Positions 16,608-54,439 are shown, numbered from the stretch's first letter. The stretch is 64,000 bases of DNA from Ramazzottius varieornatus (GCA_001949185.1 BDGG01000022.1:62001-126000), one strand, 5' to 3'. The notes: generated by a model not told the origin, from the sequence alone. Numbers and translations: made by a program.

Positions 16608-18500
16608 ATGGGCAACAGTAGCTCGAAGAAGTCGCATGTCTCCAAGGGCGACAAGCTGTCCAAGAGCGACTTGGACTTTCTGCGTGCCAACACTAACTTT
16701 GACGAGACAACCATCCGTGAATGGCACACCGGCTTCCACCGAGGTACACGAGACATGGCAACTCTTTTCTCCCCGCTGTAACCTCAGACGCCTATAACCA
16801 ACTGCAAAATAAATAATCTCAGCTGCTTCGTCCCAAGAGGACCTTCGGACAAGGTTTCTTCTGCCAACGTCCTTTCGGCAGAAGCGCCAGCTCCACAGAA
16901 AGCCCTGGGCAAATACTTGATTTCAAGGTGAAACTTTCCTGTTGCTGGGACTGTTTGAAAATCAGTACAGCTACAGGAGAGGTACCGTGGGAATAAGCTT
17001 GTATGGATAAGGCAAGAACAGGCAGGGGATATCCTTTAGCCCCAGAAATACAAATGCGGCTATCCCGCAGAGCTATAGCTGTGCTCATGTCCCTTGAATT
17101 GCCGGCCAGGCTAATGAGCTGAAGGCCACTTCCGCCTTGGCCGGAAGTGGAAACTTTCGCTGTAGCCGTCACTGCAGACCTCCCGCAGCATCCTTCAAAT
17201 GCCTCCTTTATCCATTTCCATTGAAGGTTAATATTAACGTTTTGCAAAGACAAAACGGGTTTCATAACATCATGCATACTGTTAGAGTTGTCAATGTGCT
17301 GCCTATTGGGGCCCTTTGTCAGCTCCTCAGTGGTGTCAATGCGATCAGTGCGCCTGAGGCCGTGGAAAACTTCATATCCCAAATGTTCCCACGTAGTATT
17401 TCCCGCCACATTGGGCTGTGCAAGTGCTTGTGGAAACTCTATCTTTCTCTGTCTTTACAGACTGTCCCAACGGCAAGTTATCCCCTGAGAAGTTTGTGGA
17501 AGTCTACAAGGTCTTCTTCCCCAGCGGCAATGCCTCCCTCTTTTGTGAGCACGTCTTTCGCACCTTCGACCAAGATAAATCCGGTGAGGCCCGCCCACTC
17601 TTAATTCCTCTGCCACCTTCACTGTCGTCACTTTTGAGGACTAGCAAATATCAACTCCTTCGCAATTCTTGTGTCTTTTGCAGGCTATATTGACTTTAAG
17701 GTATGTATAGTGTTACACATCGGCCTAAAGCCCCAAAGCGATTGCCGATTCAGCGAAGGACGCAGGGCACAGTGACGTCACAGATAACATACAATAAGAG
17801 CTGTAAATGCTCAGCTAATGGACAAAGTAGGATTATTGATATTGATAACGTTCCTGCCTAATAATCATATGACGGATTCATGATCTCTTTTTCACTTGCG
17901 CAGGAATTTCTCTTAGCCATTAATGTGACGTCGTCAGGAAGTGCTGAGCAAAAGCTCAAATGGGCCTTCCGCATGTATGGTAAGTTGGATATAGTACCGA
18001 TAATTATTGGCTTTACGGTCCCACGGAAATGAGCCCAATCTTCTAAATATAGAGCGTCCAATGGAGAGACGTCCTTCAGACGATGATGACGACATTGTGT
18101 CTTTGCAGATATTGATGGTAACGGCCACATTGACTTGCCGGAGATGATCAAAATAATCAAGGTGATATTAAAGCATTCATGCAAAGCTTGACCAAGAGAA
18201 ATTATGGAAAGCCAAGCCAAGATCTGCAGTGCTATCAACATTTATAGCAGCGTTTAAGGGCGGATGTTGGCTCTATTTTAGGCCATACAAGAGATGTTGG
18301 GGAGCCAACAAGTCAAAGCTATATCGGCGACGGAGCCAGGAGGCTTCTCCGACGACCCCGAAGACCGTGCTCAACAGATATTCCACAAGATGGACACCAA
18401 CCGCGACGGCATACTGGACGAGAAGGAATTTATCGAAGGTTGCTTAAATGACAAATCTCTGATGACCATGCTGACCTCCACCGGCAAGTCGCCCACCTAA
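16608..18500 (+). CDS. Neuronal calcium sensor (recoverin/NCS family, NCS-2-like), N-myristoylation motif, 6 exons
   Basis: MGNSSSK; DCPNGKLS; EF-hand loops [24 protein letters not shown] and [12 protein letters not shown]; [10 protein letters not shown]. Confidence 0.93.
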
Positions 18501-19408
18501 GCCCTAACCTGCAATATGCTCCAGCACTTTTCCACATAGACAGCCGCCATACACACCGTCTTACATCTACAGCTCCTTAAGTGCCATCTATCCTACATTC
18601 CGCTCTTACCGATATTTACTATTAAACTTGCTTATAAATAAATAACTGTCAGGAAGGAGAAGCCCATCCAGGTCATCTACAGTCCATGGCAAAGTGCCCA
18701 TTTGTCAATTCGAAGGCTTGTTGGCATCGAAGCTGCTGGCCTTCTTACCTGTCGGCCTTGTTGCAGATATGTCTTGGTCGTCGACGGTCCATGGTCTACG
18801 TGTGGCCAGCGCCTTGAAGGTCGCCGGCGCTGACAGTCCAGCATACGTCCTTCTTGGCCAGAGGTGCGGCCTTCATCCGTCTTGTTAAAGCTGCCCAGCA
18901 GATGCAGAATGTTGGCAATGGTCGACGGTAGCAAGTAGTAGCGATTTCGCTTGAAAAAGCCTTGCGGTCCGCGGACCCACATATTCAGCAGCAGCGCAGT
19001 AGTACAGTACTCCACTGCAGGCCGTACATCCACGTCGCAGCATCCAAGGTACACAACCAGCGCTCTCCTCTCTGAATGGCTGATCCTCTAAATCAGTACT
19101 TTACAGCCCTCTTAGGAACAAAGACAATATGAAGAAGTGCAAGTACTGTAGTCACAGGCTGGTTAAAACGGAAAGTCAGTCAGCTGTGGGTTGAAAGCCT
19201 AAAACTGCTAAAGGCTGACGGATATCATATCAATTAAGACATATCAAATATAAGATGGGAGGATAACAGACTTTGTTCATGAGCAAACGATGAGAAGAAT
19301 GAAGGGTGGCAAGCCCGTTGGTGTGGCGCTGCAGTCAGCAGATGAGGAGCAGGGCGGTACCAACAAGGATGATTGAACGGGCAGGAATGGGTGATGCTCT
19401 GTCCTGCC

Positions 19409-21317
19409 TCAAGCTGTGCCGTTGGGCGCCAGACGTTTGTAGGCCTCGATCAGTTCTTCAACGTCGGCGCGGGAGCCGACAAAGAAGGGAGTGCGCTCAT
19501 GGATGGAGGTCGGCTGCACGTCCAAGACGGGCATGTGGCCGGTCGTCGCTAGTCCCCCAGCTGCAATCGTACATGTATGTATCAACAATCAGAAGAACCA
19601 CTGACACACTCCCACCTTCCCATACTACACTACTGCATAAGGTACTGCCACACACTTACCGTTCTCTAAGAGGTAGGCGATGGGGTTGCATTCGTACAGC
19701 AGTCGAAGCTACAAGACCATAAGTCAAATATGTAAGACAATCCATCACCGTCTGACATGACTGTCAAGAAGATACCTTTCCCTTGGGAGAATCTTTCGTA
19801 GCTGGATACATAAAGATGCCTCCATAGCCTAAAGACCATAAATGTCATGGAAGGTCTCCTTGCTGCCAGCCTGCTGCTTCTTACACAGTGTACGATGGAC
19901 GTCGGCCACCATCGAGCCCACGTATCGCGCTCCATAGGCTTTTCCCTTCTGCCAGCACAGAAAAAACCACATCAGCATATCTTCCGTTAGTCGTCATTCA
20001 TTGCCAACAGCACAGGTCAATCACAACCCATCAAAAAGGTGGCATCTTGTCCATTGTTCTACCTGCGGGTATTTCTTTTCGTGGACGTATTGGGTGACGG
20101 CCGGATCCCATAGTGCCGTGTAGCCCTCATTGATGCTGTAGATATTGCCCCGCTCCTTGACGCGCATCGTCGGATGCGACAGGATAAATTCCCCCACGGC
20201 CGGGTCCAGCGTGAAGCCGTGAGTACCGCTGCCCAACGACAGGACCAACTACAAAGAAACATGCGCATTATCGCTATATAACTGTATAATATTACTATGC
20301 TGGCTATCATTCAAGTTTGCATACCATTGTGGCCGACCCATATACGGCATAACCAGCAGCCACAATCTGCCGCCCAGGTTGCAGAGCGTCCGTCTCCGAT
20401 ACCTTACCAGTTGTGTCCTGTACAAGAAACCAGCATCAAAGACGGGCACAGCGTGACAAGTTAAAGATGACCTGCAAACTTATCTTGCAAGTGGCGCACG
20501 ATCGCGGCCCGTAACACTAAAAACGTGCGCCACTTGGGAAAACAATCTTGCAAACTTTGTCTACCCAGCTGTCAACTACGGCACAAGGAGAAAGTGAACG
20601 GGACTCAATACTGGACGTACCTTCCGGTAGATGGAGAAGATGGTACCAATGGAAACACAGCAGTCAATGTTGGAAGAACCTGCAAAAAGCAGCATGTGCT
20701 GACTAACATGGGACTTGTGCTAAGATGGCCGTAAGCAGCTTACCGTCCAGTGGGTCGAAGCAAACAATGTATTTGCCTGAACGTTCACTCTTTATTTCAA
20801 TAGCTTTCTCGTCCTCTTCTGAGACCAGCAAGCAAGTGGTATAAGAGGATTCCAGCATGTTGATCATTAATTCGTTGGAGATATCGTCTAGCTTCTTCAC
20901 TTCTTCCCCTTGTACGTTGACATCGCCTGCCAGCCCATACCTGCAAAATAATACATCAGACTAAAAGGAAAGGGCATGCGTATCTGTTAAAGAGCGTTCC
21001 TTGTATCCCAACTGTAAGTATATAAGACTTACAGTTGGGCGATTCCAGCCTTTCGGACACTGGACGATATGGTCTTGACTGCCACAATGATGGCGTTCAG
21101 TAGCTGCGTCAAGTCTCCCGTCGCTGCAAAGAGGATCGAAAGAGTCAAAGGATAATTGCAGCATGTTATCAATTGCTCATCTGCAGAAAGGAGAGACCGT
21201 CACCTCACCTGATGGATATTTCCGCTGCTCGTCCAAGACGAAGCGCGTCAACGTCATGCAGTCCGTGGTGATACCATGGATGTTGGCGCTGGATTCTCGT
21301 CGGAAAAGTCCACTCAT
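19409..21317 (-). CDS. FBP1: Fructose-1,6-bisphosphatase (about 10 exons)
   Basis: [60 protein letters not shown]. Confidence 0.97.
20488..20536. repeat. Intronic hairpin repeat family, single unit
   Basis: CAAGTGGCGCACG-loop-CGTGCGCCACTTG followed by GGAAAACAATCTTG, in an FBPase intron. Confidence 0.85.
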
Positions 21318-22101
21318 CTTCGAGGCGGTTGCAGCCTATGCAAGTAGGGAGACCAAGTACAAAGTCAGATGACCTAGGATAGGAAGAGCATTGGTAATCA
21401 GGATTGCCTGTAAAACCGCAAGAGCTTCTGCCATGCTTACAGATGTTTTCTTACCTTGCGTTAGCACAACACAGCAAGGCCACAGTCAGCACTTCCCAGC
21501 AATCTCTCAGGGTGATCGTTGGTGTGAAGGCGAGGAAAGGAGAACGTGGAAATGGCAGCAGAAGAATTTCTGGTTGACGAAGTGCAACGTTCAACGCAAT
21601 CAAAAATTATACGATCGTGTACAGCAGGCGGAGTCCTCCTCCTGCCTTATTGGCTGCCCGCGAAGGTGCGGTTGGAAGCCAGTCTGTCCGTATGGTTTGC
21701 TTACGACGTCATGATGTTCTGCTATAAGCGCGATGACGACATGCGTCGAAGTTTGTGCTTTACTTGCTGATGAGTCTGGGCCGTGGCTTGGTATGCTTTG
21801 CCTTCACGCGACTTTGCCTTTATGCAAGACTGTACATTGCCTTCAAGGTGACTCATGCGTAGTGAATCACATGACAGCACGAAATCGCGTAGCTGAGTAG
21901 CATAACACCACGAGACAACACAACTTTAACCTCTCGCCCTTACGCGCCGTAACTTCGTAACCAAGAATTAGCGGACTCGAAGGACGCCACTTGCGTGCGA
22001 CTTTGCCCATTACGAATTTTCTTGCCTTAAATTCTCACTTCCTGCGATCTACTCTCGCTTTCTGCGTTTTTTGCCCTGATCCCTCCAACTTTCGTCTCGT
22101 C

Positions 22102-25100
22102 ATGGAAAGGCCGCCGATGATTGTGTCCGACGATGAAAACGACGTTTTTTTTGATGGCTCGGTTGTGAACGGAACGTCCAGTGTGGATGGTACGCCAAAA
22201 GACAACAAGCGGATCAAGCTGGAAAATGCTGACCAGGGAAGCCCATCTGCTGCTCTCGATGAACGCCTTGCAGCTGCAGCTGAGTCAGAATGGGATGATG
22301 TGGCTTACCCGAATGACCAGACTACAATAACGAGCAACTACAACGGTGATTCGCTTATTCCGAGCACATCTTCTGAATATAGAGGGCAAGTACCGATTTA
22401 TTTTCCATTTAGTCTGCTGAATGTGCCGGCGAGGTCCGTGTTTTATGCGCATGTTCCTTGCCTTGTATAAGCCGGCGACCAACGTTTCGCACATGCCGGC
22501 GAGGTCGATTTAATATTGGCCAGTAACTATCCATCTTTGCAGTCTGCCGGCAACAACTGGTTACCACTCATGACAACTAGCTTACTCATCTTTGTCGTTT
22601 TAGAAATTCGGCTCCGGCGAGCGGGGATAACTCTCTCATATATCTCTCGGACGACGAACACTATGACCTGTCGGCTAACTCCACGAGTGCTGTAGCGGCT
22701 GCCGGAAATTTGTCTTTGTCCCCCACCCCGTAAGTGAAACCGGCTTTCGTGCACGCCGGCGCGCTCTGTTTGACACAACCCAGCAGCAACACTTAATGTA
22801 TACACACTAGATGATCCATGATACTCTGGAGGTTAATTTTGACATACAACAACAGGTGTGTCGGCGATGTCTGTTTTATATACTCCAAAGATCGGTATCT
22901 TACACAAGCCGGCGAAAAAAAATTTTACCTAATATTACACGCATTATAACACAGCGGTCTGCTTTTGAATGGAACCATGCGAAACTAGTGACAAGTCGTC
23001 CTCGTACGTACCGGAAGACGAAGGCCATGAGATAACTGCGGTACAGACAAGCCCAAGGGATAGCACAGAAAACTCGTCAGTCTTGGCGGAATAAGTACGA
23101 TTTCGGTCAGATACAATACTGTTTAAACTAGACTAGCATAAGCTAATTTGCTGCTTTTTGTAGTGAGACGTCATTTTCAGCGCCAAAAAAAGTTTTCAAG
23201 AACACCCGTCCTGCCGCTCGTGCTGTTTGCTAACCGAGGCGAACTTCCCTTCGATCCGTCCGGCGAAGAAAGCGTTTTCGGACCATATTACAGATTGTGA
23301 GTGATGCACCTGTACATCTAAGGGGTAACGGCAATATCTGCCGGCGAGGTCGTGGCGTCATCTGCCTGCAAGTCCCGGACACTATGCGCTGGCGAGGTTC
23401 CGGCACTTAGTGCCGGCGTGGTTTCTGCACTGAGAGTTTTCTTGTTTTGCAGTGACTTGAGGTACCGCTGTTTCTAAACATCGGAAAGTGACTCCTCCGT
23501 CTTGGCGTGGCTCAGTAGTCCCGAAGTTCTTCATGTGTATGGCTGCAGCAAGATGCCTCAGTGCTTCCAAGGACGTGCCTGGTTCGCGGTAATCTTTGAG
23601 TCCGAACAACGGATCTACGGGCTGGTAGCGGACGATGGTAACGGCTGCTGGAAGGACAAGAACCGAAGATTCGAGCGTGGCAAGAAGCTCGACGACGAAA
23701 GAACGCCATTTGTATACATGAAGAAAGACTGGTGCAGCTGGCCCAACGGACAATCAAACGGCTTCAAAAGAAGAATTCTGGCCTTGGTAGAATCGGAAGA
23801 CAAATGCAAGGTTCCACTCGGTAATTTTCTGGTTGTGGAGTATTCGTGGCAGGAGGGTAGCACAACGCAGCAGTTCAAACCGGGAAAAACCTACACGAAC
23901 CGCTCCGTTACCAGTGAAATGCGGAAACTGACATCACCAGTTGCCCGTGGGAAGTCTCTTACTTCCAGGGACATTTACTTCGAAGTGGCTTCAGCAGTTC
24001 CTGAAATGGACCGAGCACTAAATCCGTGGTCCCACCGGAATTCGTCAAGCATTCACTATCAAAACCGCAGCGAACAAGGAAGTCTACGGTTCCGATGCGG
24101 AGAGCTACTTACGTGCGAGAGACGGTGTCATTTTGCGGCAGTACCTGAACGAAGATGGCACCAAATCGGAGAACTACATTCTTGTCGATCCTCATCATGT
24201 TGGACTGCTTGCAGTGAATGGGAGTCGTCAGCAAAAGCGTAAGTGTCATCCAGTGCGATCTGCGAAGTCAGTAGTCTGTAACTTAGCGCGTTCGTTAACG
24301 GTATGCCAGCGAGCTCGCTGATATACTAACCAACGAGCATCCTTTTGCATATGCCGGCGAGCTCGATGGTGTCCAAGCCGACGAGCTTGATTTGCTTACG
24401 CCAGCGAGCTCTTTAATGTTACCTCTTTGAGCCACGATGCTACTGACGATGCTAAGCCTTGTCCTATTGAATTTACGTTGGTTTCAGGCACACCACACGT
24501 GCAGGTCGACGTGACGTTCAACCTCGGCAATATGTTTGTCGTCACGATGGTCATCCAACACCCGTTCTGCAAGAATGCGGAAACCGGGAAACCTACCCTT
24601 GTCATCGGTCCAACGATGCTAACTCAGAAGAAATCACAGGCTTCATATGCGGTGTTTGAAAACTACCTTCGTAAGTGTCTGATCGGTGTTGGCGTGGATG
24701 TCCTGTCTGAAGACTGGTCATCAACTTTGTCACAGATGGAGAGCGAGCTTTGTACGAAGCGTTCCGTCAAGCCTTCCCTCGGCATAACCACACGCTGTGT
24801 GTGCTGCACATTCGAAAGGGAATAGAACGATACTTTGATGGGAAGAAAAAGACTGCGTCCGAAATAGCGTTCGTTATGAATACGATTTTCGGCTACACTC
24901 GCACAGACGGGTTGGAGAGAAGACATGTTATGGGACTGATTGACTCGGTATCGGAACAAGCATTCGTTCGGCGATGGACGGAAATTAAGATTTTCCTTGG
25001 TGCGTTAACTTTCAGCGCTGGCTCGAGAGGAACCATCATAAGAACTTCCTTGAGAAGCTTATTCTACCGCAGGCGAAGCCATGGGGTTTTCTCGCGATCT

Positions 25101-26385
25101 GCCCAACACAAATCTTGCCGAAGCCGAGCACAAGGCGCTGAAAGCGTTCTTCGGAAAAAATAAAGATCCAAGAGAGGTGGCTGAAAGACTGCTGAAGTTG
25201 TACGCGGACCAGGTTACCCACTTGTTCCAGTGCATGAAGAACCAGGGAAAATACAGAGTTCGGGAAGAGTTTGCTAAGGACCTGCTTCTCTCGAGGGAGG
25301 AAGCTCGTGATGAACGCCATATCGTAGCCAAGTTAAAGAACAGTTCCCAAAATGCGACGTGCAGGCGATAGTGCTCACTGCAACCTGGCGCCAGGTGAGA
25401 ATTGGTTTAACTGTAAGCATGTGTGAAGCCGGTGAGGTCTGCCATATATGGCTCGACGAGGTCGACCATGTACATCTCGACGAGGTCGATTGCGTAGAGC
25501 CTGGCGCAGAAGCATCACCGATGCAGCAAGCGCTGGTAGAGTTCGCGAGACAGTTCGGCAGTTTGTTAGTAACCGTTTGGCCGATATAGGTAGCTCCCGG
25601 TAAATCCTCCAACGTATCACTACCGGAATTGCCTGAGTTTCTGACCACCGGTCGCGCACCAATGTTTGCTAACAGCTGGAACCGCGCCATGGAACTTCGG
25701 AGCGACTGGATCGTCCAGTTGTCCGATTTGGAATGGCTGAACTTCAAGAACAGGTAAAGTCCGCAAAGTCCTGTCATCTGACAATATATATCTCTAACCA
25801 CCGGTGAAGGAAAGTGCAGCTGTTACCAGTCTCAGACGAATAGAGATCCAGCATGCAAGCACATCATAACCGTGGCTGCGACTACAGGCCAAGTCGACCG
25901 GCTAGTGGAGTGGCTGAAGGTGTAAAAGAGCACGAAGGTGGTTGGCAGCTGGACATTGACGAGCACTGGCGGAAAAATGCCTGGCCAGAAGCAGAGGACT
26001 GTGAAGGGAAAAGATTTCACCAAGCGGACAAGCACTGAGGCTCTTGACATGGATTTGCAGGAAGAAGGCTTTTGTTTTAGAGGAGAGGGATGCGCGAATG
26101 GTGAGTGTTGACCTGTGTCAAGCTGTATTCTTTTACTTTATTTTGTGTGAATGTTCTTGTCGGAGAGCCCAGTGCTGTGTAAGCCGCGAGCTCAGTACCG
26201 TGTATCCCGGCGACTTCGATGAAGTGTGTGCCGGCGAGCTCGGCGAAGCGTTGCCAGTAACAGCTAATATGTCGCGCTTTCCGCAGGGAAACCATGGCAG
26301 GATAGTACTTACGAGTTCAAAATCACAAAGGTCTCGGTTCCTGGCTCGCGATACCAGTGCCCCGGATGCCGAACATCGTTCATGA
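22102..26385 (+). pseudogene. Degenerate intron-containing MULE transposase with SWIM zinc finger
   Basis: VDVTFNLG, IGPTMLTQKKSQASY, FVTDGERALYEAFRQAFP..HTLCVLH, TNLAEAEHKALK; SWIM finger CSC-x9-CKH at 25815-25862. Frameshifts near 24715, 25010 and 25072. Confidence 0.88.
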
Positions 26386-28165
26386 AGAAGCCAGCCGAAC
26401 AAGATCTGCTCGTCACCCGTGTAGAACAGGACTTCGAAAACGGAATTGGCGGTCATTGCGTTGCCGCGATGTTGTCGGCACCATATGAACAACCGCTGTA
26501 TTAAGATTCGACACAGCAAATTTCACTCCGATAACGATGTTATCGAAGACAAAATTCTTCAGAAGTTGTCCGATGGAGAGCGTGCTGCTATCCGCAATTT
26601 TCGTTCCGGATACATTGTCTAATTTGATTAAAACTTGAAATCTCTTCACGGTCGTGGAAGCATTGAGCAACTTATGAAATGTTAGTAGTCTGTTTTTATT
26701 AATATTTTTCTTTATTAATAAAACATAACAGCATGTCCCACACTTTGTATTGTGAGCCGTAGAACCCACCCGGCGGAAGAGGAAACCGAATTAGATGGGT
26801 AGGGGCAAGTATCAGAATGTATCTACTGCAGAAGAAAGCCAACAGTATATTGTGATAAGATATCCGATAAGAGAACTAAAGGCTTTTGTGGGCTCCAAAC
26901 CAACCTGAACAACAAAGACTACTTCTTACAAGCTCATCAAGTCACGGGCAGCGCGATCGACAGAGGATTCTCGTGTTTGTTTGGCTGATGCAGGCTGCGC
27001 CGGTTTCACCGACTTGGACTTCTCATCCTGAGACTTGTTCTTGGTAACACCAGCTTTCTTGGCTCCTTCAGCCTTCTGCGTATCGGCAGTCTTTTCTGGT
27101 CGCTTGGTTGTCGTCTTGGAAGTGCCTGCGAAACATTGCTCTATACTTAACAGTGAAATGCTCGACTGAAACAGACGCAGTGGAGCCTTGGAAGCAGACT
27201 TACTTGTGCAAGGCTCTTCGTCGCTGCTGACTTCTTCGAGGGTATGTAATCGCCGAGGCGCTAGAATCTGGTCGAGCTCTGTCCGCTCAAACAAATCTAA
27301 AAAGTTCTCAAGACCTGTGGGTTATAGGGTCAGGTTTCTCTTTAGCGGCCTGTCATCGCCGTGGCCTTTCCCTTAGCCCTTGGTCACCTCGAATTTCATT
27401 CTCCACATGGCGGCTAAGGAGGCACTCCAGACAGCAAATTCGCCGTGATGATGCTTCTTAGACGCGGTCCATCTGGAACAAAGAAAGTAGGTCAATGAAT
27501 TCGCATGATACTCGCACTACCTGACTACTCTGCGTACTAACGTTTTCAAAATCCACAGTACCAAAGCACTCTTTCTAAGCTTACCTTCTGAAGAACTCCC
27601 ACACGCCTTTGCTGTATAGATCGCAAGTGTTACTTTTTTCAAAGTTCTCGACAATCCTGTAACGATGACAAAACCCACAGCACGAAACGAGTGTGCTGAT
27701 TCTGCAAAACCTACTAATCAACTGCACCGCAGGACTTTGAGTTCTTTTCCGGAAGGTTTTCAGACACGTTGGTCACGCAGTCGCTTTCTTCGTTGTCTTC
27801 ATCATCTTCGTCGCCTTCCTCGTCCTCATCACTTTTATCCTCGTCTTCCTTTCGCTTCGTCTCTGTTAACAAAGCCAGCTCATTTGGTACCACTATAAAT
27901 CGTAAGTAGTTCACAATGTAAGTGCAAGCTTTGCCGAGATAACTGGTTTACGCTACCTTCGGCATCAGCAGCATTTTTCTTTTTCTTCTGCTCATCCGCA
28001 GCACTGAGGTCCATGGATTCAGTAAAAACCGTAATGGCGTCCACAGTCTCGTTCACTACAAAGACATGGCAGAATGTACTTTGGCGGATATACTTGGCTG
28101 TACAGGCCGACGACCTCAATACACTGTACGCCGGCGACCTCACTACACTGTATGCCGACGACCTC
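22425..28165 (+). repeat. Seven intronic arrays of a GCCGGCGAG(G/C)TC motif at about 24-bp period, specific to the MULE
   Basis: Motif starts: 22425/22471/22495; 22755/22860/22908; 23340/23364/23388/23412; 24305/24329/24353/24377/24400; 25428/25452/25476; 26159/26183/26206/26230; 28106/28130/28154. Confidence 0.88.
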
Positions 28166-29086
28166 TCAAAGCGAACCTTCATAGTTTTTATGTCGCGAAT
28201 GGGGAAAAATTTCGGAAAACTGCCCACATTCTACCTGCTTCGAGTTCCTCGTCAGAAGACTTCTCGAGTTCTTCACTCGATATGGTCGGTAGTCCATCTG
28301 CTGGAGCGAGCAAAGGCTCGATTATCTTGGGCGGTGCATCGACTGCATACGATTCTACACTGTTACGATCCTGCTTGCTGCTCGTCGGACTTGCAAATAT
28401 GAAACAAAAGAGGCTTCAGCCGAGCAATGACCGAGCAATGAATTCCCATGAATCGCAAACAAGAACTAGAATTTAGTGAAATATTGCTGTTCGATCCAGC
28501 CTGTAGTGTTCACCGTTTTGTCGAGCCTGTAAAGACGAGCCTGTAAATCACATAAACGCAACCCATTCTTTCAGCTGTGGCGCCTCTTCTGCTACCTCCC
28601 TCTCCTCGGCCTCGCACGGAAGAAACTCCGTCGAACAGTACAGGAGTCAGACTTGGAGGCATCCTTGTCTTCTTCTCCGTCGTTTGCAGACTAGTGGCCC
28701 TGTCTTTCTAAGCCGTCTTCTTATTTTTGATTCTACTAAAATCACACAAATTAACCATTATCACTCACAAATCTACCAGGAGAAATTTGCACGGTAATGC
28801 CATTTTCTACGCAGTACTGACCTGGCCTCCATGAAGACATCATTTACGCCAGAGGCCTTCGCGTCATTCTCGCCATTCTGGAGCATCAGCGAGTCGCTGA
28901 ATATCCACTCGTCATACCTAAAGAGGACAAGCACTCAAACATCTTCATTCCGCGAACCTAATGGACACCGGAGCGTGCTTACCGTTTCCCCCAGCCTGGG
29001 TAGTGAATCCTGTAGATGGGCACGGACGTGGCCTGTTCTCCGGGATACTTGTCCGCTTCGATTAGGATAATCTTGGCCTTGTGCCA
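26926..29086 (-). pseudogene. MULE accessory gene: chromo-barrel (Tudor-knot) domain, acidic and Lys-rich middle, C-terminal RESSVDRAARDLMSL; 5'-truncated with internal stops
   Basis: Exons 29086-28983 and 28917-28822 splice to WHKAKIILIEADKYPGEQATSVPIYRIHYPGWGKRYDEWIFSDSL, the MRG15/MSL3/MOF-type YxIHYxGWxxxYDEW signature. Further exons run down to the stop at 26926. Confidence 0.75.
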
Positions 29087-29135
29087 AAAATTGGTGTCCG
29101 AGTCACACCGAATTTGGGGTTCGGGGTCTAGGAAC

Positions 29136-30131
29136 TAGGGTTGTTAATGGATGGATAAACGGTTGAATGGATGGATATGCGGATGGATAAAAACTTATCC
29201 GGATACCATTTGGATGGATAAAAGGTTTATCCGTATCCAGCTTCTTGGATAAAACTTTTATCCGGATTATCCGGATATTATCCGGTTACACCAATTAGAT
29301 ACAAACCATATGTTCAATCACTCGAGCCAAACCGAAACTACCAAACTTTGTAGCGTATCTATTCATGGTCTGTCATCATTGCTACCATGGCTTCAAAAAC
29401 CACCGTTCAAGAGTTCAGACATAAGGCTTGAAGGGCCTCAGGTTCTAGGCGGTTACGAAGGACTGTATCGACCACAACCAGAGAATGCACTCTCAGGAGG
29501 CACAAAAGAAGCCTGTGCAGCTAAAACATCCTTCGCAATGCGGTACAATGTCGGATAGCGGCTTTCCGACATGCTCCAAAATTCCAGGCATCTCTTTTGA
29601 CTGATTCCTTTGGATCCAGGAAGAATTGGTCATCTTCGTTAAGCTGGGAGTCTGCTGCGGAAGTGACTTGCGCCATCGTCCGTTCGCGGATATACAGCTG
29701 CGTATTCGGAGGTAGAGCAGTAGACTTCTCGGCAATGTCGGATCTTCCTCTTTGGCTGTAATGAAAACAACTTACAAACAGCACGAGCTATAGTTCGTAA
29801 GAACGGAAGAGTGTAACGAGAAACAACGTTCAATAAGCCGACTTCCGGTAGGCTTGTAACAGCAGAGAGATTGCGCATCGTTACGATTCTTTCAGAGGTA
29901 CGAAACGTTAGCAAGACGAGTTGGGCTGTTCTGCTTTGATTGTCTGTTTTATTGATTCAGGTAGGTTAATCCGAATAAACCTCGGATGGATAGAGATGTT
30001 ATCCGGATCATATCCGGATGGATAAGAGTTTTATCCGATTAGGAGCTGGATGGATAAGATTCTTATCTAATCCATGTTTTATCCGGATATATCCGGATAA
30101 ATCCGTTGTGGATGGATAATTAACATTCCTG
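29136..30131 (-). mobile_element. Internally deleted hAT of a second family (996 bp) nested in the first hAT
   Basis: TIR YAGGRWTGTTAAT; 8-bp TSD CTAGGAAC at 29128-29135 and 30132-30139; GGATGGATAA/ATCCGGAT subterminal repeats. The minus-strand relic RYPTLYRIAKDVLAAQASFVPPESAFSG...RNRLEPEALQAL is a hAT dimerisation domain. Confidence 0.92.
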
Positions 30132-30387
30132 CTAGGAACACCACATCACACCAAACCGAAAAACTTTTGGTGCACCAGATTTAATGAGCTAGTCAGCTAG
30201 CTTGGGCTAGATGAGTATCGCAAACTCGCTGTTTCGCTCCGTGGTTGATTCGACTAACCGTTGATTGTTTAAGCTGCGAAAATTCAGCTGTGTGGAATGT
30301 TTTCTTCCGAATTCGTCCGTATTACATCACTCTGATTACATCTTGCCATCTTTCGACGGTTCTGTTTGTTCTTTCTGAATAGCTGTC

Positions 30388-32850
30388 ATGTTTGGAAACA
30401 GGCTGACGTTCAACCAGGAGCTGGAACAGATTCGTGCGGAGAGCGAAGAAAGGAATGCCGTACGTCGCGAAATGGACGAAGGTGAACTGGACGATATGCC
30501 GATGGAGATTGCCGCTGCGACTTCGCCGCCACCTTCTCTAGGTTCATGGACTTCGACAGTCAAGGGTAAGAGAGCCGCGAAAGAAGTGAAACGCCGAGCG
30601 CCTATCTACACGTATTGGAATCTGGACGAGAAAGCGAAGAAGTTCAGATGTGGGTTTGGCAAGTGCAAGCAGACTTACGCCGAAACCAACTCCAGCTCGA
30701 TGCTGACTGCCCATACCAAGTCTTCTCACCGAACTGAATGGAAGAAAGCCGAAGGCAGAACCACGAATTCTGCCAGCTCAAAATCAGCAGCAGTACCCGA
30801 AGCGTTCCAACCCGTAGATCCAAAGCTGAGCCGTAAAGAGCAACAAGCGATTGACGATCGCCTCAAACGACTCATCACAGGTGGAAATCTACCCTTCGCC
30901 CTTGTGGACTATCCTGAAGTCAGAGAATTTGCCCAAGCTCTGAATCCTCTTTATGAAGTACCGAGCAGGTTCACTCTCAAAGCTTGGCTGTGCGCCGACT
31001 TCGAAAAGTATAGGCAGAAGGTAAGGCTAATCTTGCAAGATTACTATCATATTTCTCGAATTCAGAATTCTGATTGTAGGTGAAAGCTGAGCTAGCTAAC
31101 GTACCTGGACGAATCTCATTGACGTTAGATCCGTGGATTTCTGTGGCTCACGAAGGATATCTGGGGCTTATGGCACACTGGGTGACTTCAGAGTTCGAGT
31201 TACAGAAGTTACTGCTCGGGTTTGTCAGCCTACCAGCCGAGCACACTGGGGAAGCCCTGAAAGAAAAAGTCATGTCAATCCTGAGAGACTACGGTATCGC
31301 GCACAAGACGTTCGCCTGGACTATGGATGGGGCCGCGAACATGAAAGCTTTCTTCAACGACATGAAACCGGAACTTCAACTTGAGAGACAGAGCCAGAAC
31401 GTGACTACTGAAGGTTTGTATTCACAAATCCATTCTTGGAAGTCCATTTCTGAATTCGGAGATTAAAACAGCTTAATTTTTGTGAACGATTATCGCTTAT
31501 GCATCTGCTTTGCAGTGTCGGAATTCCGGAGACGGTGCGTCTGTCAAGTGATGAACAACGTGGCGGAAGTTGGCATTGAGGATGACTTAAAGCTGGTTAG
31601 TTGGGTACGTGAGATGGTCAAGTTCATACGAAAGCCGAAAGCAAAGAAACAGTACATCGCGTTGCGAGAGTCGGAAAAAGACAGAGACAAGGATAGACAT
31701 CCCAGGTTACCCTTGGATGTCTCCACAAGATGGAGTAGCACTTTGCCAATGCTACGGGGTGCTTTTGAGGCGAGGCACCACCTGGAAAAGTTTCGCGGCT
31801 ACGTACGGTACCACCACGTTCAAGAAGAACCTACTGAAAGATTCTGAATGGGATGACGTGAGCCGCTTGATACGTTTTCTGAGTCCATTGGAAGAAGCCA
31901 TAAACGACTGTTCGGCCTCGAAGTCTCCCACTTTCCATCTCGGCAAGCAGTGCCTGGCTATCCTTCAAGACCACTTCAAGGTAAAATTAGTTAACTGATA
32001 GAAGAGCTACTTCCGGTTCGCAATGAAAGTTTCTTGGTATTTGTATACCGTGGTTTGAATATCTCACTATTCGCGTTTAGGTTTCATTCTGCTCTAACAG
32101 AATTCCGAAATCGAAATGTGAATCACACTATTATTAGTCACCAAAATACTGACGTACGAACCGATCCTCCATCAGATGCTCTTCTACCAGATTAAGTAAT
32201 TTTCTCTTAAGGCCGTGCAAGACGATCCGAGCAAGGTAAGAATAATTTCTGCATTCGGTTTGGTGGCGTTTTCTATCACGGAATTTCGTTATAGAAACCC
32301 TACATCAAGAAGACAGCAGAGAACATGAAAGCCAAGCTGACTTCGGTCGAACTGGATTGCTGGCAGCAGGAAGTCACAATCGTTGCCCTTCTTCTGGATC
32401 CTTGTGTCAAAACAAATATCTTCGCAAGCCCCCTGGAAAGAAATTACAAGCCACGGAGGTGCTGAAGAAATACGTCGGTCTTTACTCGGATAAAAATGTC
32501 GGAATTCGGAAAATGTCACCGTTAGTCAATCACAGCCTACATCTCTTCGCGACTCTTTCCTGAGAAAGATCACTAAAGGGTCGACTGCTCAACAGAATGA
32601 AGTCGATAGTTATCTTGGAAGCTCAGCGGAACCAAAGTGCGACGTCCTGGAATGGTGGAAATCCCGACCTAATGTTTTCCCTGTCTTGTCAAAAATGGTG
32701 ATTGACTTTATGGCTGTTTGCGCTTCGTCGGTCCCCTCTGAGCGATGGTTTTTCGACCGTGCAGGTTTCGATGTGTCTGAAATCTTGGTATTTTTTTGAG
32801 TTTCCTACAGCGCAGTTCGATTTGTCGATGACGGATGAATAAATTGTGAA
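30388..32850 (+). pseudogene. hAT transposase (BED zinc finger, DDE, C-terminal dimerisation domain), frameshifted
   Basis: IYTYW...CGFGKC...LTAHTKSSH; NLPFALVD; ISLTLDPW; TMDGAANM; LDVSTRWSST; LLLDP; EVDSYL...DVLEWWK...FPVLSKM...ASSVPSER. The CxxH motif reads CVCQ and there are frameshifts (e.g. near 31815). Confidence 0.93.
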
Positions 32851-33885
32851 TTCGCTCTTTGAAACTTTTTTCGGTTTTTCGATTTGGTTTGGTGTGGTGC
32901 ACCGAAAGAGTGGTGTCCGATCCACACCACACCGGAAAAAGTGGTGTGGCTTTCGCACCGAAAAACCAGTTTCGGTGTGGAGAAGCGCCGAACCGAAAAA
33001 CACACCACACTTAATCACACTTTTCTCAGGTCTACGCGCCAGATACCAGCTTTGCCGTGGAGCTCCGCCTATAATCATGGAACAGGATGAGAGTATAAAC
33101 ATCAAAAGTGAGTCACTTGATGAATTCAACATTTTTTCGAAGCGGTAGCCGGGCAGCCAGCCCCGAATGCAGGTTTGCGGGCCTTTGGAACAGCATTCGG
33201 GGCAATTTCGTGAATTGGACAGATAACGACATAAGCGCAGCGCCTCCTGTTGGGCATGTTACAGCGAAAGAACTCGCTCATTCTTCCTCTTCTGCAGTTC
33301 TGCCCACCGAAAGTAATCTTTCGGAGATTCCCTCCCCTTCAGACGAATAGTAATAATCAAACGTCGTACGTCGTTCCGCTAACACTATCATATCACGAAG
33401 TTATACTGCCCATCCGTTACTAGCTTCTCTATAACAGATAAACTGGCCATCGTCCAGGCTTATCGTGCTGCCGACTTATTTACGCCGTCCTGTGTCTATG
33501 AAGTTTTCTTACCGCTTTACGTTAAACGGCATAACACCTCCCGTCCACTCTTTGCTAACCACTCTTGATACGAAGTCATCTTTCCAGTTTCAAGCGGCGT
33601 TCTTTCCAATATAAATATAGGCGTCCTTAATATAAAACCGATCACAGTTTACATTTCGCCGTTGCTCGAGTTCGGCATATCGGTACCTTATCTCTCATTG
33701 GACAATTGGAGTGGACGATCGTTTACTTGTTGCTGGAGTCAATTCCGTATATTGTTTATAGAAATAACGGCGACTATCGTGATTGCTTGTCTAGACAGGC
33801 TTTCCTCCCGTGGTGCTAATTAGCAGCCGGATTTGTCCAGTGGAAAATTGAAGCCGTACAGCCTACCTTTCACCACAAGGAAGCG

Positions 33886-53000: not shown

Positions 53001-54439
53001 AGCCACTCATAACATGTTCAAGAGCGCCAGACATGGTCCTGTTATGGGTGTGGGCATTCAGGTAGGACGACAACTACTGCACAGCTGGCCAAAGAAACCC
53101 TTGTTTTGTCAGATGGCGCACACTCGCAGTGTTGGTCGTCGGCAGTGTGCGCCACTTGGGAAAACGATCTGATCAAGTTGCCCAGGGTGCGCTTGACCTC
53201 GTTGGCTACTGCTGAAGCTTGTCGGAAAGGGTTTTCGCCTCTGCAGGTGGAAGAGGAGGATTTAGAGCCGGACTCGTCGGACGAGGAAGTGCAGGACATA
53301 TTGCGCGAGGCCCAGGAAGAGATTCTAGAGTTAAAGTTCAGCCTGGAAGACGCCCTGATGGATTTGTCGGCCGAGAAGCAGAAGAATGCCCACCTGGAGA
53401 CGCGCGTCAACGCCTGGATTCGCGCCCACTTTAGCGCCTCCTCCATGGAAGCCGAACGACTGGAGACACTGAACAACGTGGCCACCTACTACTACGACTT
53501 CGCCAAGAAGGCTGAAGAAGGCAAGCGCACCATCAAGGCTGAACTGGAACTCTTCAGAGCCAACTTTGTCCGCGCCCAGAAAGAAACCGAATCGTATCGG
53601 TAGGGCACGATCAAGACTGTCGACATGTTCAGAAGAATGTCACATCAAAAGCTTTCCTTTTGCAGATCGCAGATTATCGAGTTGCAAGGTGCCTCGACGC
53701 GCGAGCTGGAACGGATTCAGCAAGCCAAGACGAGGAACGAGAAAGAAGCCCAAGAGACGATCCAGACTTTGCGTCGTCAGCTGGCCGACTCGGCGGTGGC
53801 TGCTGAACACGCTAAGCGAGCGCAATTGGCGGCCGAAGAGAATGTCCGCAGGCTGAATGCGGGTGGTGGCGCGGCACTACGCCCTGCGGCCCACCACGCA
53901 GCACCACAGCCGGCCTATGCTGCCTCCGACGAGTCCGAACCCACACCGCCACCCAAGAAGCGAGCTCCGCGTGGCTCTAACAAGAAGGCCACCGCCGCCG
54001 CCACCGCACAAGCCCAGGCCATCGTGGCACAGCGCCAGCGCGAAGAACAGGTAACAGAAGTGCGGGGCACAACAAGATTGTTATCCCAAGTGGCGTACGT
54101 TTATACTGTTAATGGCTTGAGTGGCGCACGTCTTCAGTGTTACAGGCCGGTGCAGTGCACCGCTTGAAGAAAATTTGGGAGCTTTTTCAGAAGGGTTAAG
54201 TGGAAATTCGCTGTGCCAAACATTTGTCGTTTCCGTGTCTACAGGCAGCAGCGGAAGCTGCGGAAGCCCAAGCGGCAGCTGCGCAGGCCAACACGGGACG
54301 AGGGAGGAAGCGCGGTCGAGCAGCCAAGGAGCCGTCGCAGTCGCAGACGCCGTCGCCCGCCAAGGATTCTTCGGCAAGTAGCAAAAAGCAGCGCGAGTCT
54401 TCTGTCGACCGTGCTGTCCGTTACTTGATGAGCTTGTAG
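50046..54439 (+). CDS. THAP zinc-finger protein with AT-hook-like motifs, coiled coil and C-terminal RESSVDRAVRYLMSL
   Basis: CVVPDC...FVFP...W...LCVKHF...LKKDAVPTIF (about 51519-51795); KRGRP; heptad-rich region at 53250-53850; consistent splice sites. Confidence 0.8.
51995..52016. repeat. (TG)11 microsatellite immediately upstream of a splice acceptor
   Basis: Directly visible; followed by TTTTCAG. Confidence 0.9.
53110..53158. repeat. Intronic hairpin repeat family, single unit
   Basis: TGGCGCACAC-loop-GTGTGCGCCACTTG followed by GGAAAACGATCT, in a THAP-gene intron. Confidence 0.8.
54087..54166. repeat. Intronic hairpin repeat family, one partial plus one degenerate unit
   Basis: CAAGATTGTTATCC-CAAGTGGCGTACG...GAGTGGCGCACGTCTTCAGTGTTAC, in a THAP-gene intron. 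Confidence 0.75.

What the first reader, a model, noticed from the sequence alone, without database searches (positions are those of the whole stretch)
21930..29086. Candidate new system: an animal Mutator element with a chromatin-reader accessory gene and its own intronic motif arrays (VANDAL/VANC-like layout)
Seen: a MULE transposase (+) and a convergent second gene (-) that encodes a chromo-barrel/Tudor-knot domain and ends in a conserved amphipathic peptide. Introns of both genes carry the same GCCGGCGAGSTC motif at 24-bp spacing, and I see no such arrays elsewhere in the window. Established: maize MuDR has convergent mudrA/mudrB genes, and Arabidopsis VANDAL MULEs encode VANC proteins that bind element-specific motifs in tandem arrays in their non-coding regions to escape silencing. 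Inference: this family may encode a sequence-addressed chromatin-control module, with the arrays as the address and the accessory protein as the effector. A chromo-barrel is not a known sequence-specific DNA binder, so the transposase or a host factor could be what binds the motif. This copy is degenerate.
Basis: partly seen in the sequence, partly recalled or inferred. Interest (0 to 1): 0.9.

Follow-up and report, generated by a model that had tools for sequence, protein, structure and literature searches.

The report
Tardigrade Mutator transposon with chromatin-reader gene
A decayed copy of a tardigrade "jumping gene" of the Mutator type carries a second, conserved gene for a histone-mark-reading protein, and its introns hold short repeats found almost nowhere else in the genome, a layout so far worked out only in a plant transposon that uses it to escape silencing.

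Summary
The genome is Ramazzottius varieornatus. Window 21785-29085 is a right-truncated, frameshifted copy of a ~7.5-kb Mutator-superfamily transposon. Full copies have ~77-bp terminal inverted repeats and 9-bp target duplications, seen at three independent insertions. A convergent second gene encodes an MRG/Eaf3/MSL3-type chromo-barrel. After it come an RGG-like tract, acidic and lysine-rich tracts, and a C-terminal helix.

- The second gene is linked to the transposase in every subfamily. This includes a lineage whose transposase is only 33-38% identical.
- The motif GCCGGCGAGSTC has 28 exact genome-wide matches (reversed control 1). Of these, 21 lie inside family copies.

The arrays sit in GT...AG introns and share one orientation within the transposase gene. 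They grow and shrink in roughly 24-bp steps. They persist with a shifted motif in a sister subfamily whose synonymous sites are saturated. Between subfamilies both genes evolved under purifying selection.

Who binds the arrays, and whether silencing is countered, stays untested. No copy I examined is intact, and RNA evidence was unavailable. The VANDAL/VANC comparison holds for layout, not for membership.

First-stage notes flagged the same two-gene layout on other contigs of this genome. New here: the C-terminal 15-mer is identical to that of a THAP-domain gene in this window.

The parts
21785..29085 (+). Subfamily-A copy of the two-gene MULE. It is truncated at the right end: about 820 bp are missing, including accessory exon 1 and the right TIR.
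   Evidence: Homology to the other copies starts sharply at 21785 and stops at 29085/29086. Full copy C5a is 7,544 bp.
21785..21861 (.). Left terminal inverted repeat. It starts GGCTTGGTATGC and contains two CTTTGCCTTCA repeats.
   Evidence: The same ~77 bp recur inverted at the far end of copies C5a, C5b, C1b and C50 (82-90% identity).
22103..26622 (+). Transposase gene (MULE DDE domain plus a SWIM-like finger). It is degenerate here, with frameshifts and stops.
23463..24240 (+). Large N-terminal exon of the transposase. It has no known domain and may be the DNA-binding part. It is frameshifted near 24020.
   Evidence: Conserved between subfamilies A and B. No Pfam hit. The Atlas gives only a weak CG-1 lead at score 0.84.
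24488..25396 (+). DDE catalytic exon. It is one open exon of about 300 aa in fuller copies and is split by frameshifts here.
25592..26100 (+). Exon with the SWIM-like CxC...CxH finger. It carries 3 stops in this copy.
   Evidence: UniRef names P0002 a SWIM-type domain protein.
22425..22557 (+). Motif array in transposase intron 1: 4 cores at spacings 46, 24 and 51.
   Evidence: The intron is 215 bp with 4 motifs here and 332 bp with 7-8 motifs in copies C5b and C20.
22755..22919 (+). Motifs in transposase intron 2: 3 cores at spacings 105 and 48.
23340..23423 (+). Array in transposase intron 3: 3 cores at spacings 48 and 24.
24305..24411 (+). Array in transposase intron 4: 4 cores at spacings 48, 24 and 23.
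25428..25489 (+). Array in transposase intron 5: period 24, degenerate units.
   Evidence: The same variant GCCGGTGAAGTC sits in this intron in both A (C5a) and B.
26183..26255 (+). Array in transposase intron 6: period 24.
   Evidence: The intron is 187 bp here and 259 bp in C5a, a difference of 72 = 3 x 24.
26926..29085 (-). Accessory gene, convergent with the transposase. It is 5' truncated in this copy.
28983..29085 (-). Accessory exon 2 (partial): first strands of the chromo-barrel (...WHKAKIILIE...YRIHYPGWGKR).
   Evidence: The splice to exon 3 matches gene models P0153, P0154 and P0156.
28822..28917 (-). Accessory exon 3: the rest of the chromo-barrel (YDEWIFSDSLMLQN...).
28106..28165 (+). 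Array in an accessory-gene intron: 2.5 units of 24 bp, GCCG[G/A]CGACCTC.
   Evidence: It is intronic in gene model P0172. Subfamily B has an array at the equivalent place with the core on the other strand.
26926..27125 (-). Last accessory exon: lysine-rich tail plus the C-terminal peptide. The peptide is 26929-26973 and the stop is 26926-26928.
   Evidence: Helix prediction has pLDDT 66-80.
54392..54436 (+). Outside the element: the last 15 codons of a THAP-domain gene. They encode the same peptide, RESSVDRAVRYLMSL.

Best explanation
SHOWN.
- This is a copy of a Mutator-superfamily (MULE) cut-and-paste transposon family of the tardigrade Ramazzottius varieornatus.
- A full element has ~77-81-bp TIRs and makes 9-bp target duplications.
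- It carries two convergent, intron-bearing genes. One is a MULE/SWIM transposase.
- The other is an accessory protein of roughly 440 aa (my estimate from exon lengths). It has a conserved N-terminal segment, then an MRG/Eaf3/MSL3-type chromo-barrel without an MRG domain. An RGG-like tract, an acidic tract and a lysine-rich tail follow. The tail ends in a helix.
- Both genes evolved under purifying selection while the subfamilies diverged, so the accessory protein served the element.
- The introns of both genes hold arrays of a GCCGGCG-core motif at 24-bp period. The arrays are private to this family. All arrays in the transposase gene share one orientation. They expand and contract in roughly unit-sized steps. 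They are kept in two subfamilies whose synonymous sites are already saturated.

INFERRED.
- The arrays are cis-acting, high-density landing pads on the DNA. A sequence-specific factor made or recruited by the element would bind them. The transposase N-terminal region is the likeliest binder, and the accessory protein's RGG or N-terminal part is the second candidate.
- The arrays would mark every copy of the family as 'self'.
- The chromo-barrel protein is the chromatin-side partner. It would read methyl-lysine marks of transcribed chromatin (H3K36me3 or H4K20me type). Through its tail it would hold element copies in, or direct them to, permissive chromatin.
- In logic this is the self-addressed control circuit known from Arabidopsis VANDAL/VANC, built from unrelated parts.
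- This copy and all others I examined are inactive.
For: Element structure.
- Sharp homology edges and inverted ~77-bp ends.
- 9-bp TSDs: GCCCACTGC at C5a, CTTAAACTG/A at C1b, TGGCCAACC at the B copy on C2.

Transposase.
- Pfam MULE at E 8e-5, below threshold.
- 253 phmmer relatives, some of which pass the curated MULE and Transposase_mut cut-offs.

Accessory protein.
- Tudor-knot and MSL3_chromo-like above their cut-offs on spliced gene models.
- Best solved relatives are Eaf3, MRG701, MRG2, MSL3 and MRG15.

Linkage.
- The chromo-barrel exon lies within 2-7 kb of the transposase, on the opposite strand, in lineages A, B, D and E.

Selection.
- Between A and B the transposase has pN 0.22-0.33 with pS 0.74-0.86. 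The accessory exons have dN/dS 0.11-0.21.

Arrays.
- 28 exact genome matches against 1 for the control, and 21 of the 28 are in family copies.
- The commonest 8-mer of each copy is the motif itself.
- 17 of 26 core hits fall in 1.3 kb of GT...AG introns, and 3 more in the accessory intron.
- Subfamily B has its own variant at the same 24-bp period.
- Intron lengths differ between copies by 72 bp (3 x 24) and by 117 bp.

Precedent.
- VANDAL21 shows the same set of array features (PMC5735166).
- A Mutator transposase can itself act as a sequence-specific activator of cognate copies (bioRxiv 10.64898/2026.08.24.746577).
Against: - No binding, expression or chromatin data exist.
- No recognisable sequence-specific DNA-binding domain was found in either protein.
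- In the ~3 kb I hold around the chromo-barrel exon of lineages D, E and the C18 locus there are no GCCGGC arrays. The accessory gene therefore predates the arrays and can exist without them.
- The single orientation of the motif across six transposase introns would also fit an RNA-level role.
- 24 bp is 8 codons. One array-bearing intron stays open in frame in this copy, and database models read through it.
- All copies are damaged, so the system may be extinct in this strain.
Confidence: 0.4

Rival explanations
1. The two features are independent. The chromo-barrel protein is an integration helper. It tethers the transposition complex to nucleosomes carrying a particular methyl mark and so chooses target sites, as chromodomain integrases of chromoviruses or LEDGF do for retroelements. 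This echoes mudrB, which is reported as needed for integration. The arrays are ordinary internal transposase-binding or enhancer sites and have nothing to do with the accessory protein.
For: - The two-gene layout is older than the arrays. Lineage E has linked genes but no arrays in the stretch I hold.
- mudrB is described as apparently required for integration (PMC6446971).
- A Mutator transposase alone can activate cognate copies in a sequence-specific way.
- The accessory protein has no sequence-specific DNA-binding domain.
Against: - An array also sits in the accessory gene's own intron in both subfamilies.
- The TIRs carry a different repeated motif (CTTTGCCTTCA), which is the usual place for transposase binding.
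- Insertion-site chromatin preference was not examined.
Confidence: 0.22
2. The arrays act in the RNA, not the DNA. They would be sense-strand intronic elements of the pre-mRNA that bind an RNA-binding protein. That protein could be the accessory protein itself, through its RGG tract and its Tudor-knot-type barrel. The arrays would control splicing, retention or export of transposase transcripts, comparable to the regulated third intron of the P element.
For: - All arrays in the six transposase introns have the motif on the sense strand.
- The arrays are strictly intronic and absent from the promoter and UTR regions.
- The accessory protein has a conserved RGG-like tract.
- Pfam describes the Tudor-knot family as an RNA-binding knot of a chromodomain.
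Against: - In subfamily A the array in the accessory intron is antisense to that gene, while in B it is sense. Orientation relative to the host transcript is therefore not kept.
- The core is largely palindromic (GCCGGC, CGCCGGCG), which is more typical of duplex-DNA sites.
Confidence: 0.12
3. The arrays are functionless minisatellites. They arose once in an ancestor of subfamilies A and B and spread among introns by slippage and intra-element gene conversion. They are element-specific simply because they are part of the element.
For: - Array copy number is unstable.
- Units are degenerate (58-98% matches by TRF).
- Arrays are absent from what I hold of the older lineages.
- MULEs with minisatellites of unknown function are known in insects (table in PMC6446971).
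Against: - A and B are saturated at synonymous sites (pS 0.74-0.86) and their introns do not otherwise align.
- Yet both keep the same 7-8-nt core, the same 24-bp period and arrays at corresponding introns.
- Spread to seven separate introns of two genes with the core preserved needs either selection or an unusually directed conversion process.
Confidence: 0.15
4. The second gene is a captured host fragment (Pack-MULE style) without a role for the element.
For: MULEs often capture host gene pieces (PMC6446971). The C-terminal 15-mer is shared with a THAP-domain gene.
Against: - The gene is linked to the transposase across lineages down to 33-38% transposase identity.
- dN/dS between subfamilies is 0.11-0.21.
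- The closest non-element chromo-barrels in the genome are only 32-43% identical.
- Similarity to the THAP gene is limited to ~40 nt, with synonymous differences.
Confidence: 0.03

Closest known systems
Arabidopsis VANDAL21 (Hiun) with VANA/VANB/VANC (PMC5735166)
   Same: - Mutator-superfamily element with extra genes.
- A short motif that is enriched in the family and rare elsewhere.
- The motif lies in non-coding parts including introns, arrayed in one orientation at high density inside tandem repeats.
- Repeats are gained and lost between copies, and related families carry shifted motifs.
   Different: - The accessory protein here is an MRG/MSL3-type chromo-barrel with disordered tails, not a VANC-family protein.
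- There are two genes, not three.
- The host is an animal.
- Binding and anti-silencing are untested.
- The arrays lie only in introns, plus one intergenic spot in subfamily B, and not upstream of the transposase.
Maize MuDR (mudrA/mudrB)
   Same: A Mutator element with long TIRs, a 9-bp TSD and two convergently transcribed genes. One is the transposase and the other a helper of unclear biochemistry.
   Different: I made no direct sequence comparison with MURB. Pfam sees only a chromo-barrel in the accessory protein. MuDR has no comparable intronic motif arrays (from my own knowledge).
En/Spm (CACTA) TnpA with subterminal 12-bp repeat arrays
   Same: An element-encoded regulator is thought to read many short repeated motifs inside its own element, giving family-specific control.
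   Different: - It belongs to a different superfamily.
- Its motifs are subterminal, not intronic.
- TnpA derives from a transposase, not from a histone reader.
Animal MULE clades with minisatellites (Rehavkus, aphid MULEs; table in PMC6446971)
   Same: Animal Mutator elements that carry internal minisatellites. Some relatives of this transposase carry chromatin-type domains (PHD, OTU) fused to the transposase.
   Different: There the minisatellite sits after or at the end of the transposase ORF. No separate chromo-barrel gene is described. That survey mentions neither tardigrades nor chromo or Tudor domains.
MRG15 / Eaf3 / MSL3 chromo-barrel proteins
   Same: The reader domain belongs to this family by Pfam and by best PDB matches. 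Three of the four aromatic cage positions are aromatic in the alignment. The cage positions themselves are from my memory of MRG15.
   Different: - There is no MRG domain, so the usual docking into NuA4, Rpd3S or MSL complexes is not expected.
- The first cage position is His.
- The protein is encoded by a transposon.
Chromodomain integrases of chromoviruses and LEDGF-type tethering
   Same: A mobile element uses a methyl-lysine reader to connect to chromatin.
   Different: Those readers are fused to, or bound by, a retroelement integrase.

Membership tests
Mutator (MULE) superfamily of DNA transposons | DDE transposase with the MULE / Transposase_mut catalytic domain | tested here: met
   - The element's own DDE exon scores 23.5 and 21.9 bits against a cut-off of 27.6, so it is below threshold alone.
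- phmmer joins it to proteins that pass: P0132 (MULE 31.1 bits), P0110 (MULE 30.9, Transposase_mut 23.8), P0081 (Transposase_mut 22.5).
- UniRef names several R. varieornatus paralogues MULE-domain proteins.
Mutator (MULE) superfamily of DNA transposons | Target-site duplication of about 9-11 bp | tested here: met
   Three insertions have 9-bp TSDs: GCCCACTGC, CTTAAACTG/A and TGGCCAACC.
Mutator (MULE) superfamily of DNA transposons | Terminal inverted repeats, often long | tested here: met
   TIRs of ~77 bp in subfamily A and ~81 bp in subfamily B, both starting GGCTTG[G/C]TATGC.
Mutator (MULE) superfamily of DNA transposons | SWIM-type zinc finger after the catalytic domain (common, not universal) | tested here: inconclusive
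   The element's own exon gives E 0.032, 14.2 bits against a cut-off of 19.6. The Paramacrobiotus relative P0009 passes at 22 bits. A CxC...CxH pattern is visible.
VANDAL/VANC-type sequence-addressed anti-silencing system | Family-specific short motif arrayed in one orientation in tandem repeats in the element's non-coding regions | tested here: met
   compared with PMC5735166.
VANDAL/VANC-type sequence-addressed anti-silencing system | Related families carry diverged motifs | tested here: met
   Subfamily A has TGCCGGCGAG[G/C]TC and subfamily B has CACGCCGGCGAAGT / GCCGGCGAAGTGG. Only two subfamilies could be compared.
VANDAL/VANC-type sequence-addressed anti-silencing system | A VANC-family protein encoded by the element | tested here: not met
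   Pfam finds only Tudor-knot and MSL3_chromo-like in the accessory protein. All homologues found come from R. varieornatus elements. So this is not a member. At most it works alike.
VANDAL/VANC-type sequence-addressed anti-silencing system | The accessory protein binds the motif and removes silencing marks from cognate copies | not testable with these tools
   This needs EMSA or DAP-seq and chromatin profiling.
MRG/Eaf3/MSL3 chromo-barrel (Tudor-knot) readers | Chromo-barrel domain above the curated threshold | tested here: met
   - Tudor-knot scores: P0153 30.4, P0154 31.2, P0156 28.1, P0159 27.6 bits (cut-off 20.8).
- MSL3_chromo-like scores 29.3 and 28.5 bits (cut-off 28).
- The window's own partial exon scores only E 0.024.
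- The AF2 model of the barrel has moderate confidence. Foldseek rows to MRG2, MRG15, Eaf3 and MSL3 are not significant.
MRG/Eaf3/MSL3 chromo-barrel (Tudor-knot) readers | C-terminal MRG domain that docks the protein into acetyltransferase or deacetylase complexes | tested here: not met
   No MRG-domain hit appears in P0156 or P0159, or in the window's own exons. P0172 was not scanned on its own. The region is predicted disordered apart from the terminal helix.
MRG/Eaf3/MSL3 chromo-barrel (Tudor-knot) readers | Aromatic cage for methyl-lysine | tested here: inconclusive
   In the alignment to Eaf3, positions HY, GW and [KR]Y-DEW are aromatic and the first position is His (WHEAK). The cage positions are from my memory of MRG15. 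No confident structure is available.

The most novel reading that the evidence does not exclude
This would be an animal counterpart of the plant VANDAL/VANC circuit, assembled from different parts. The transposon would write its own address, fast-evolving GCCGGCG arrays, into its introns. It would also encode a histone-mark reader that, once brought to that address, keeps family members in permissive chromatin. The element could thereby plug into, or compete for, a host docking site by molecular mimicry.
Probability: 0.18. Interest if true: 0.85.

Novelty: new variant of a known kind. Interest (0 to 1): 0.66.

Why it matters
Transposon-encoded countermeasures to host silencing are well documented in plants (VANC, and in a sense TnpA) but are almost unknown in animals.

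Here an animal DNA transposon family keeps two things under selection. One is a dedicated methyl-lysine reader gene. The other is family-private motif arrays that behave like the VANC target arrays. This gives a concrete, small system of about 7.5 kb, two proteins and a 12-nt motif. It can be used to test whether self-addressed chromatin control evolved convergently in animals.

It also offers a natural case of a reader domain separated from its usual complex-docking domain. And it points to a short C-terminal helix shared between a transposon protein and a THAP-domain gene, which could mark a so far unknown docking interface.

If the arrays prove neutral, the finding still adds a well-defined two-gene MULE clade to the animal repertoire. 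A broad survey of Mutator elements lists mostly single-ORF elements in animals (PMC6446971).

Tried and rejected
- Pfam on the window's own exon pieces gave nothing for the transposase and only E 0.024 for the chromo-barrel. The fuller copies and database gene models were needed.
- PDB sequence search with the DDE exon and with exon 2 alone gave no meaningful hit.
- A strict two-unit pattern (exact motif, 12 nt, exact motif) has no genome match, because the units are degenerate.
Gene neighbourhoods of the Paramacrobiotus and Lineus relatives could therefore not be examined.
There is no RNA evidence for expression or splicing.
The transposase sides of lineages D and E and the locus C1:6317688 could not be read.
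I searched exons by reference and used database gene models by id.
- Continuing selection on the accessory gene in dead copies is not supported. Private changes give omega 0.46-0.58 against 0.7-0.9 for the transposase, which is not significant (Fisher p 0.5-0.8).
- AF2 of the accessory models gave mean pLDDT 46, and Foldseek found no significant match.
- The Atlas search of the transposase N-terminal exon gave a CG-1 lead at 0.84, below the tool's 0.9 bar.
- The protein-database search for other proteins ending in the shared peptide found only two element copies. The length window excludes long proteins.
- A THAP1-type site (TNNGGGCA, from memory) does not match the motif.
- Complex prediction was not used, because no specific pair was well enough founded.
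- I overwrote a scratch file. That made one TIR check wrong, and I repeated it correctly.

Full report
WHAT IS THERE.

The window is G000:C22:62001-126000 of a 55.8-Mb, 200-contig genome. Exact protein look-ups identify it as Ramazzottius varieornatus: RvY_05205 and RvY_05206 are a sister copy of this element.

Comparing window 17000-34000 with the other copies shows homology that starts sharply at 21785 and ends at 29085/29086. The first ~77 bp (GGCTTGGTATGC...) recur inverted at the far end of copies on C5, C1 and C50.

The full copy C5a (C5:1394853-1402396, minus) is 7,544 bp and is flanked by a perfect 9-bp duplication, GCCCACTGC. Copy C1b has CTTAAACTG/CTTAAACTA. The subfamily-B copy on C2 (L029 4586-13350, 8,765 bp, ~81-bp TIRs) has a perfect TGGCCAACC.

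The window copy has lost its last ~820 bp. That stretch held accessory exon 1, the start of exon 2 and the right TIR. No right end lies elsewhere in the window.

THE TRANSPOSASE.

Comparing subfamilies A and B at protein level defines the conserved coding blocks. They are a large N-terminal exon, a ~300-aa DDE exon, a SWIM-like exon and short 3' exons. The DDE exon is one open frame in the fuller copies. What look like small introns there in the window copy are frameshifts.

Pfam sees MULE below threshold (E 8e-5 and 2.5e-4; 23.5 and 21.9 bits against 27.6) and SWIM at E 0.03. A full HMMER pass over 1.84 billion proteins finds 253 relatives. The nearest are R. varieornatus proteins and unnamed ENA or Logan contigs. 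Next come Paramacrobiotus metropolitanus (35%) and Lineus longissimus (29%).

Distant relatives pass the curated MULE and Transposase_mut thresholds. Some carry PHD and OTU domains. Together with the TIRs and 9-bp TSDs, membership in the Mutator superfamily is secure.

Every copy I could examine has stops, frameshifts or deletions in the transposase.

THE SECOND GENE.

On the minus strand, exon 2 (28983-29085, truncated) and exon 3 (28822-28917) encode ...WHKAKIILIE...YRIHYPGWGKR | YDEWIFSDSLMLQN....

Exon by exon the Pfam signal is marginal. The window exon gives E 0.024. Complete exon 2 of subfamily B gives 20.3 bits against a cut-off of 20.8.

Instead I recovered database gene models of other copies by searching with an open frame containing exon 2. 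These are P0153, P0154, P0156, P0159 and later P0172.

On these spliced models Tudor-knot scores 27.6-31.2 bits (cut-off 20.8). MSL3_chromo-like scores 28.5 and 29.3 bits (cut-off 28) on P0159 and P0156.

The best solved relatives are Eaf3, MRG701, MRG2, MSL3 and MRG15. There is no MRG domain.

The models and the A/B comparison give this architecture:
- a conserved N-terminal segment (exon 1, absent from the window);
- the chromo-barrel;
- an RGG-like tract (RDRGEGGSRRGAT in A, ARGRGKGGSRGGAT in B);
- an acidic tract;
- a lysine-rich tail;
- the ending RESSVDRAVRYLMSL.

AF2 models are poor overall (mean pLDDT 46). They give a moderate-confidence barrel and a confident C-terminal helix. Foldseek shows no significant hit, with MRG2, MRG15, Eaf3, Esa1 and MSL3 among the weak top rows.

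IS IT PART OF THE ELEMENT?

Yes. DNA and protein searches of the genome place the chromo-barrel exon next to the transposase, on the opposite strand, in four lineages:
- subfamily A: C22, C1:3.80M, C5:1.40M, C5:0.85M, C50 and others;
- subfamily B: C2:2.51M, C2:5.30M, C14, C4:1.67M, C7;
- lineage D: C9:1.87M, C4:2.22M;
- a far lineage E: C19:286-289k and C5:1.647-1.654M, with 33-38% transposase identity and 52% barrel identity.

The closest non-element chromo-barrels are only 32-43% identical.

Between A and B the accessory exons have dN/dS 0.11-0.21. The transposase has pN 0.22-0.33 with saturated synonymous sites.

Changes private to single copies look neutral in the transposase (omega about 0.9). 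They are not significantly lower in the accessory exons. The gene was therefore selected as part of the active element, and the present copies are decaying.

THE ARRAYS.

In the window, the 12-mer with up to 2 mismatches gives 28 hits against 6.9 expected. Seventeen are inside the element, and 16 of those lie on the plus strand. TRF finds period-24 or period-48 arrays only inside the element.

Each array lies in a gap between conserved coding blocks that is bounded by canonical GT...AG signals. Seventeen of 26 core hits fall in 1.3 kb of transposase introns, and three more in an accessory-gene intron. That intron is also an intron in gene model P0172.

Genome-wide there are 28 exact matches to GCCGGCGAGSTC, against 1 for the reversed control. 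Twenty-one lie in family-A copies, always on the transposase strand.

De novo k-mer counts make the motif the commonest 8-mer of every A copy. In subfamily B the commonest is the extended palindrome CGCCGGCG.

Subfamily B has arrays of the same 24-bp period but a different tail: CACGCCGGCGAAGT in the 5' intron and GCCGGCGAAGTGG in the accessory intron. In the accessory intron the asymmetric core lies on the other strand compared with A.

The same odd variant GCCGGTGAAGTC sits in intron 5 of both A and B.

Among A copies the array-bearing introns differ in length. Intron 1 is 215 bp with 4 motifs, or 332 bp with 7-8 motifs. Intron 6 is 187 or 259 bp, a difference of 72 = 3 x 24.

The introns of A and B otherwise do not align, and synonymous sites are saturated. 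Retention of core, period and position therefore argues for constraint.

In the ~3 kb I hold around the barrel exon of lineages D, E and the C18 locus there are no such arrays.

A SHARED C-TERMINAL PEPTIDE.

Following a first-stage lead (s1-808268), I found that the last 15 residues, RESSVDRAVRYLMSL, are identical in three places:
- subfamily A (C1a, C5a);
- subfamily B (C2a);
- the last exon of a gene at window ~51.4-54.4 kb.

That gene begins with a THAP-type finger. It also has a coiled-coil-like middle, judged by reading the ORF translations, and an AT-hook-like GRGRKRGR. I did not run Pfam on it.

Nucleotide similarity is limited to about 40 nt, with synonymous differences and unrelated flanks.

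A degenerate back-translated pattern finds 9 places in the genome against 0 for the control. They are the element copies, the THAP gene and one further locus, C1:6317688.

This looks like a short docking or pairing helix kept by selection in both a transposon protein and non-element genes. Its partner is unknown.

COMPARISON WITH WHAT IS KNOWN.

The published description of VANDAL21/VANC21 (PMC5735166) lists these array features: a motif enriched in the family and rare elsewhere; a location mainly in non-coding regions including introns; many motifs in one orientation at high density; a position within tandem repeats that are gained and lost between copies; and related families with different motifs. 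Each of these was measured here.

The protein is unrelated to VANC, however, and nothing is known about binding or silencing.

MuDR shares the convergent two-gene layout. A broad survey of Mutator elements lists mostly single-ORF elements in animals. It lists some minisatellites, and no chromo or Tudor accessory gene and no tardigrade element (PMC6446971). A 2026 arthropod survey likewise does not describe one.

A recent preprint shows that a Mutator transposase alone can be a sequence-specific activator of cognate copies. This keeps the transposase in play as the array reader.

VERDICT.

The element is a new two-gene variant of animal MULEs.

My best mechanistic reading is a family-private cis address read by an element-derived factor, with the chromo-barrel protein as the chromatin partner. 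This is inferred, and I give it about 0.4. The rivals are an integration tether with independent arrays, RNA-level intronic elements, and neutral minisatellites.

First-stage notes on other contigs of this genome had flagged the same layout. They are not independent evidence.

Noticed in passing
window 51400-54439 (+); peptide at 54392-54436: A gene with a THAP-type zinc-finger N-terminus, a coiled-coil-like middle and an AT-hook-like GRGRKRGR ends in the same 15 residues as the transposon accessory protein. Similarity is peptide-level only, with synonymous differences. The domain calls come from reading the ORF translations, not from a Pfam run.
   Followed up: partly
G000:C1:6317688-6317720 (-): A third, non-element place encodes DRAVRYLMSL followed by a stop, with many synonymous changes.
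   Followed up: no
L033/L042 (G000:C18:~307150-308420, minus strand): An accessory-gene-like locus has exons 1-3 open (76-83% aa identity to subfamily A) and an RGG tract. The 11.5 kb I hold show no TIR, no transposase and no GCCGGC motif. It could be a stranded fragment or a domesticated copy.
   Followed up: partly
G000:C19:285793-288857; G000:C5:1647345-1653527; G000:C10:1308009: A much more divergent two-gene MULE lineage has transposase identity of 33-38% and chromo-barrel identity of 52%, with the genes convergent. There are no 24-bp arrays in the accessory-side 3 kb. A 7-bp repeat (AAATGGC x4) recurs in two of its copies.
   Followed up: partly
window 29087-30110: Directly after the truncation point lies a stretch rich in GGATGGATAAA and TTATCCGGATA words, with TRF hits at 29258-29276 and 30080-30105. 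It is probably another repeat or element that replaced the MULE's right end.
   Followed up: no
accessory versus transposase halves of subfamilies A and B: The accessory exons are less diverged at synonymous sites (pS 0.51-0.64) than the transposase exons (pS 0.74-0.86). This could mean exchange of the accessory half between subfamilies, or extra constraint on its codons.
   Followed up: no
window 25359-25589 (+): The reading frame of the DDE exon stays open through the whole of array-bearing intron 5 in this copy. The 24-bp unit equals 8 codons, and the database model P0002 reads through the equivalent stretch in subfamily B. A retained-intron protein isoform cannot be excluded.
   Followed up: partly
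window 21785-21861 and the other copies' ends: The TIR contains two copies of CTTTGCCTTCA 17 bp apart. This is a different motif from the intronic arrays and is the more conventional candidate for a transposase-binding site.
   Followed up: no
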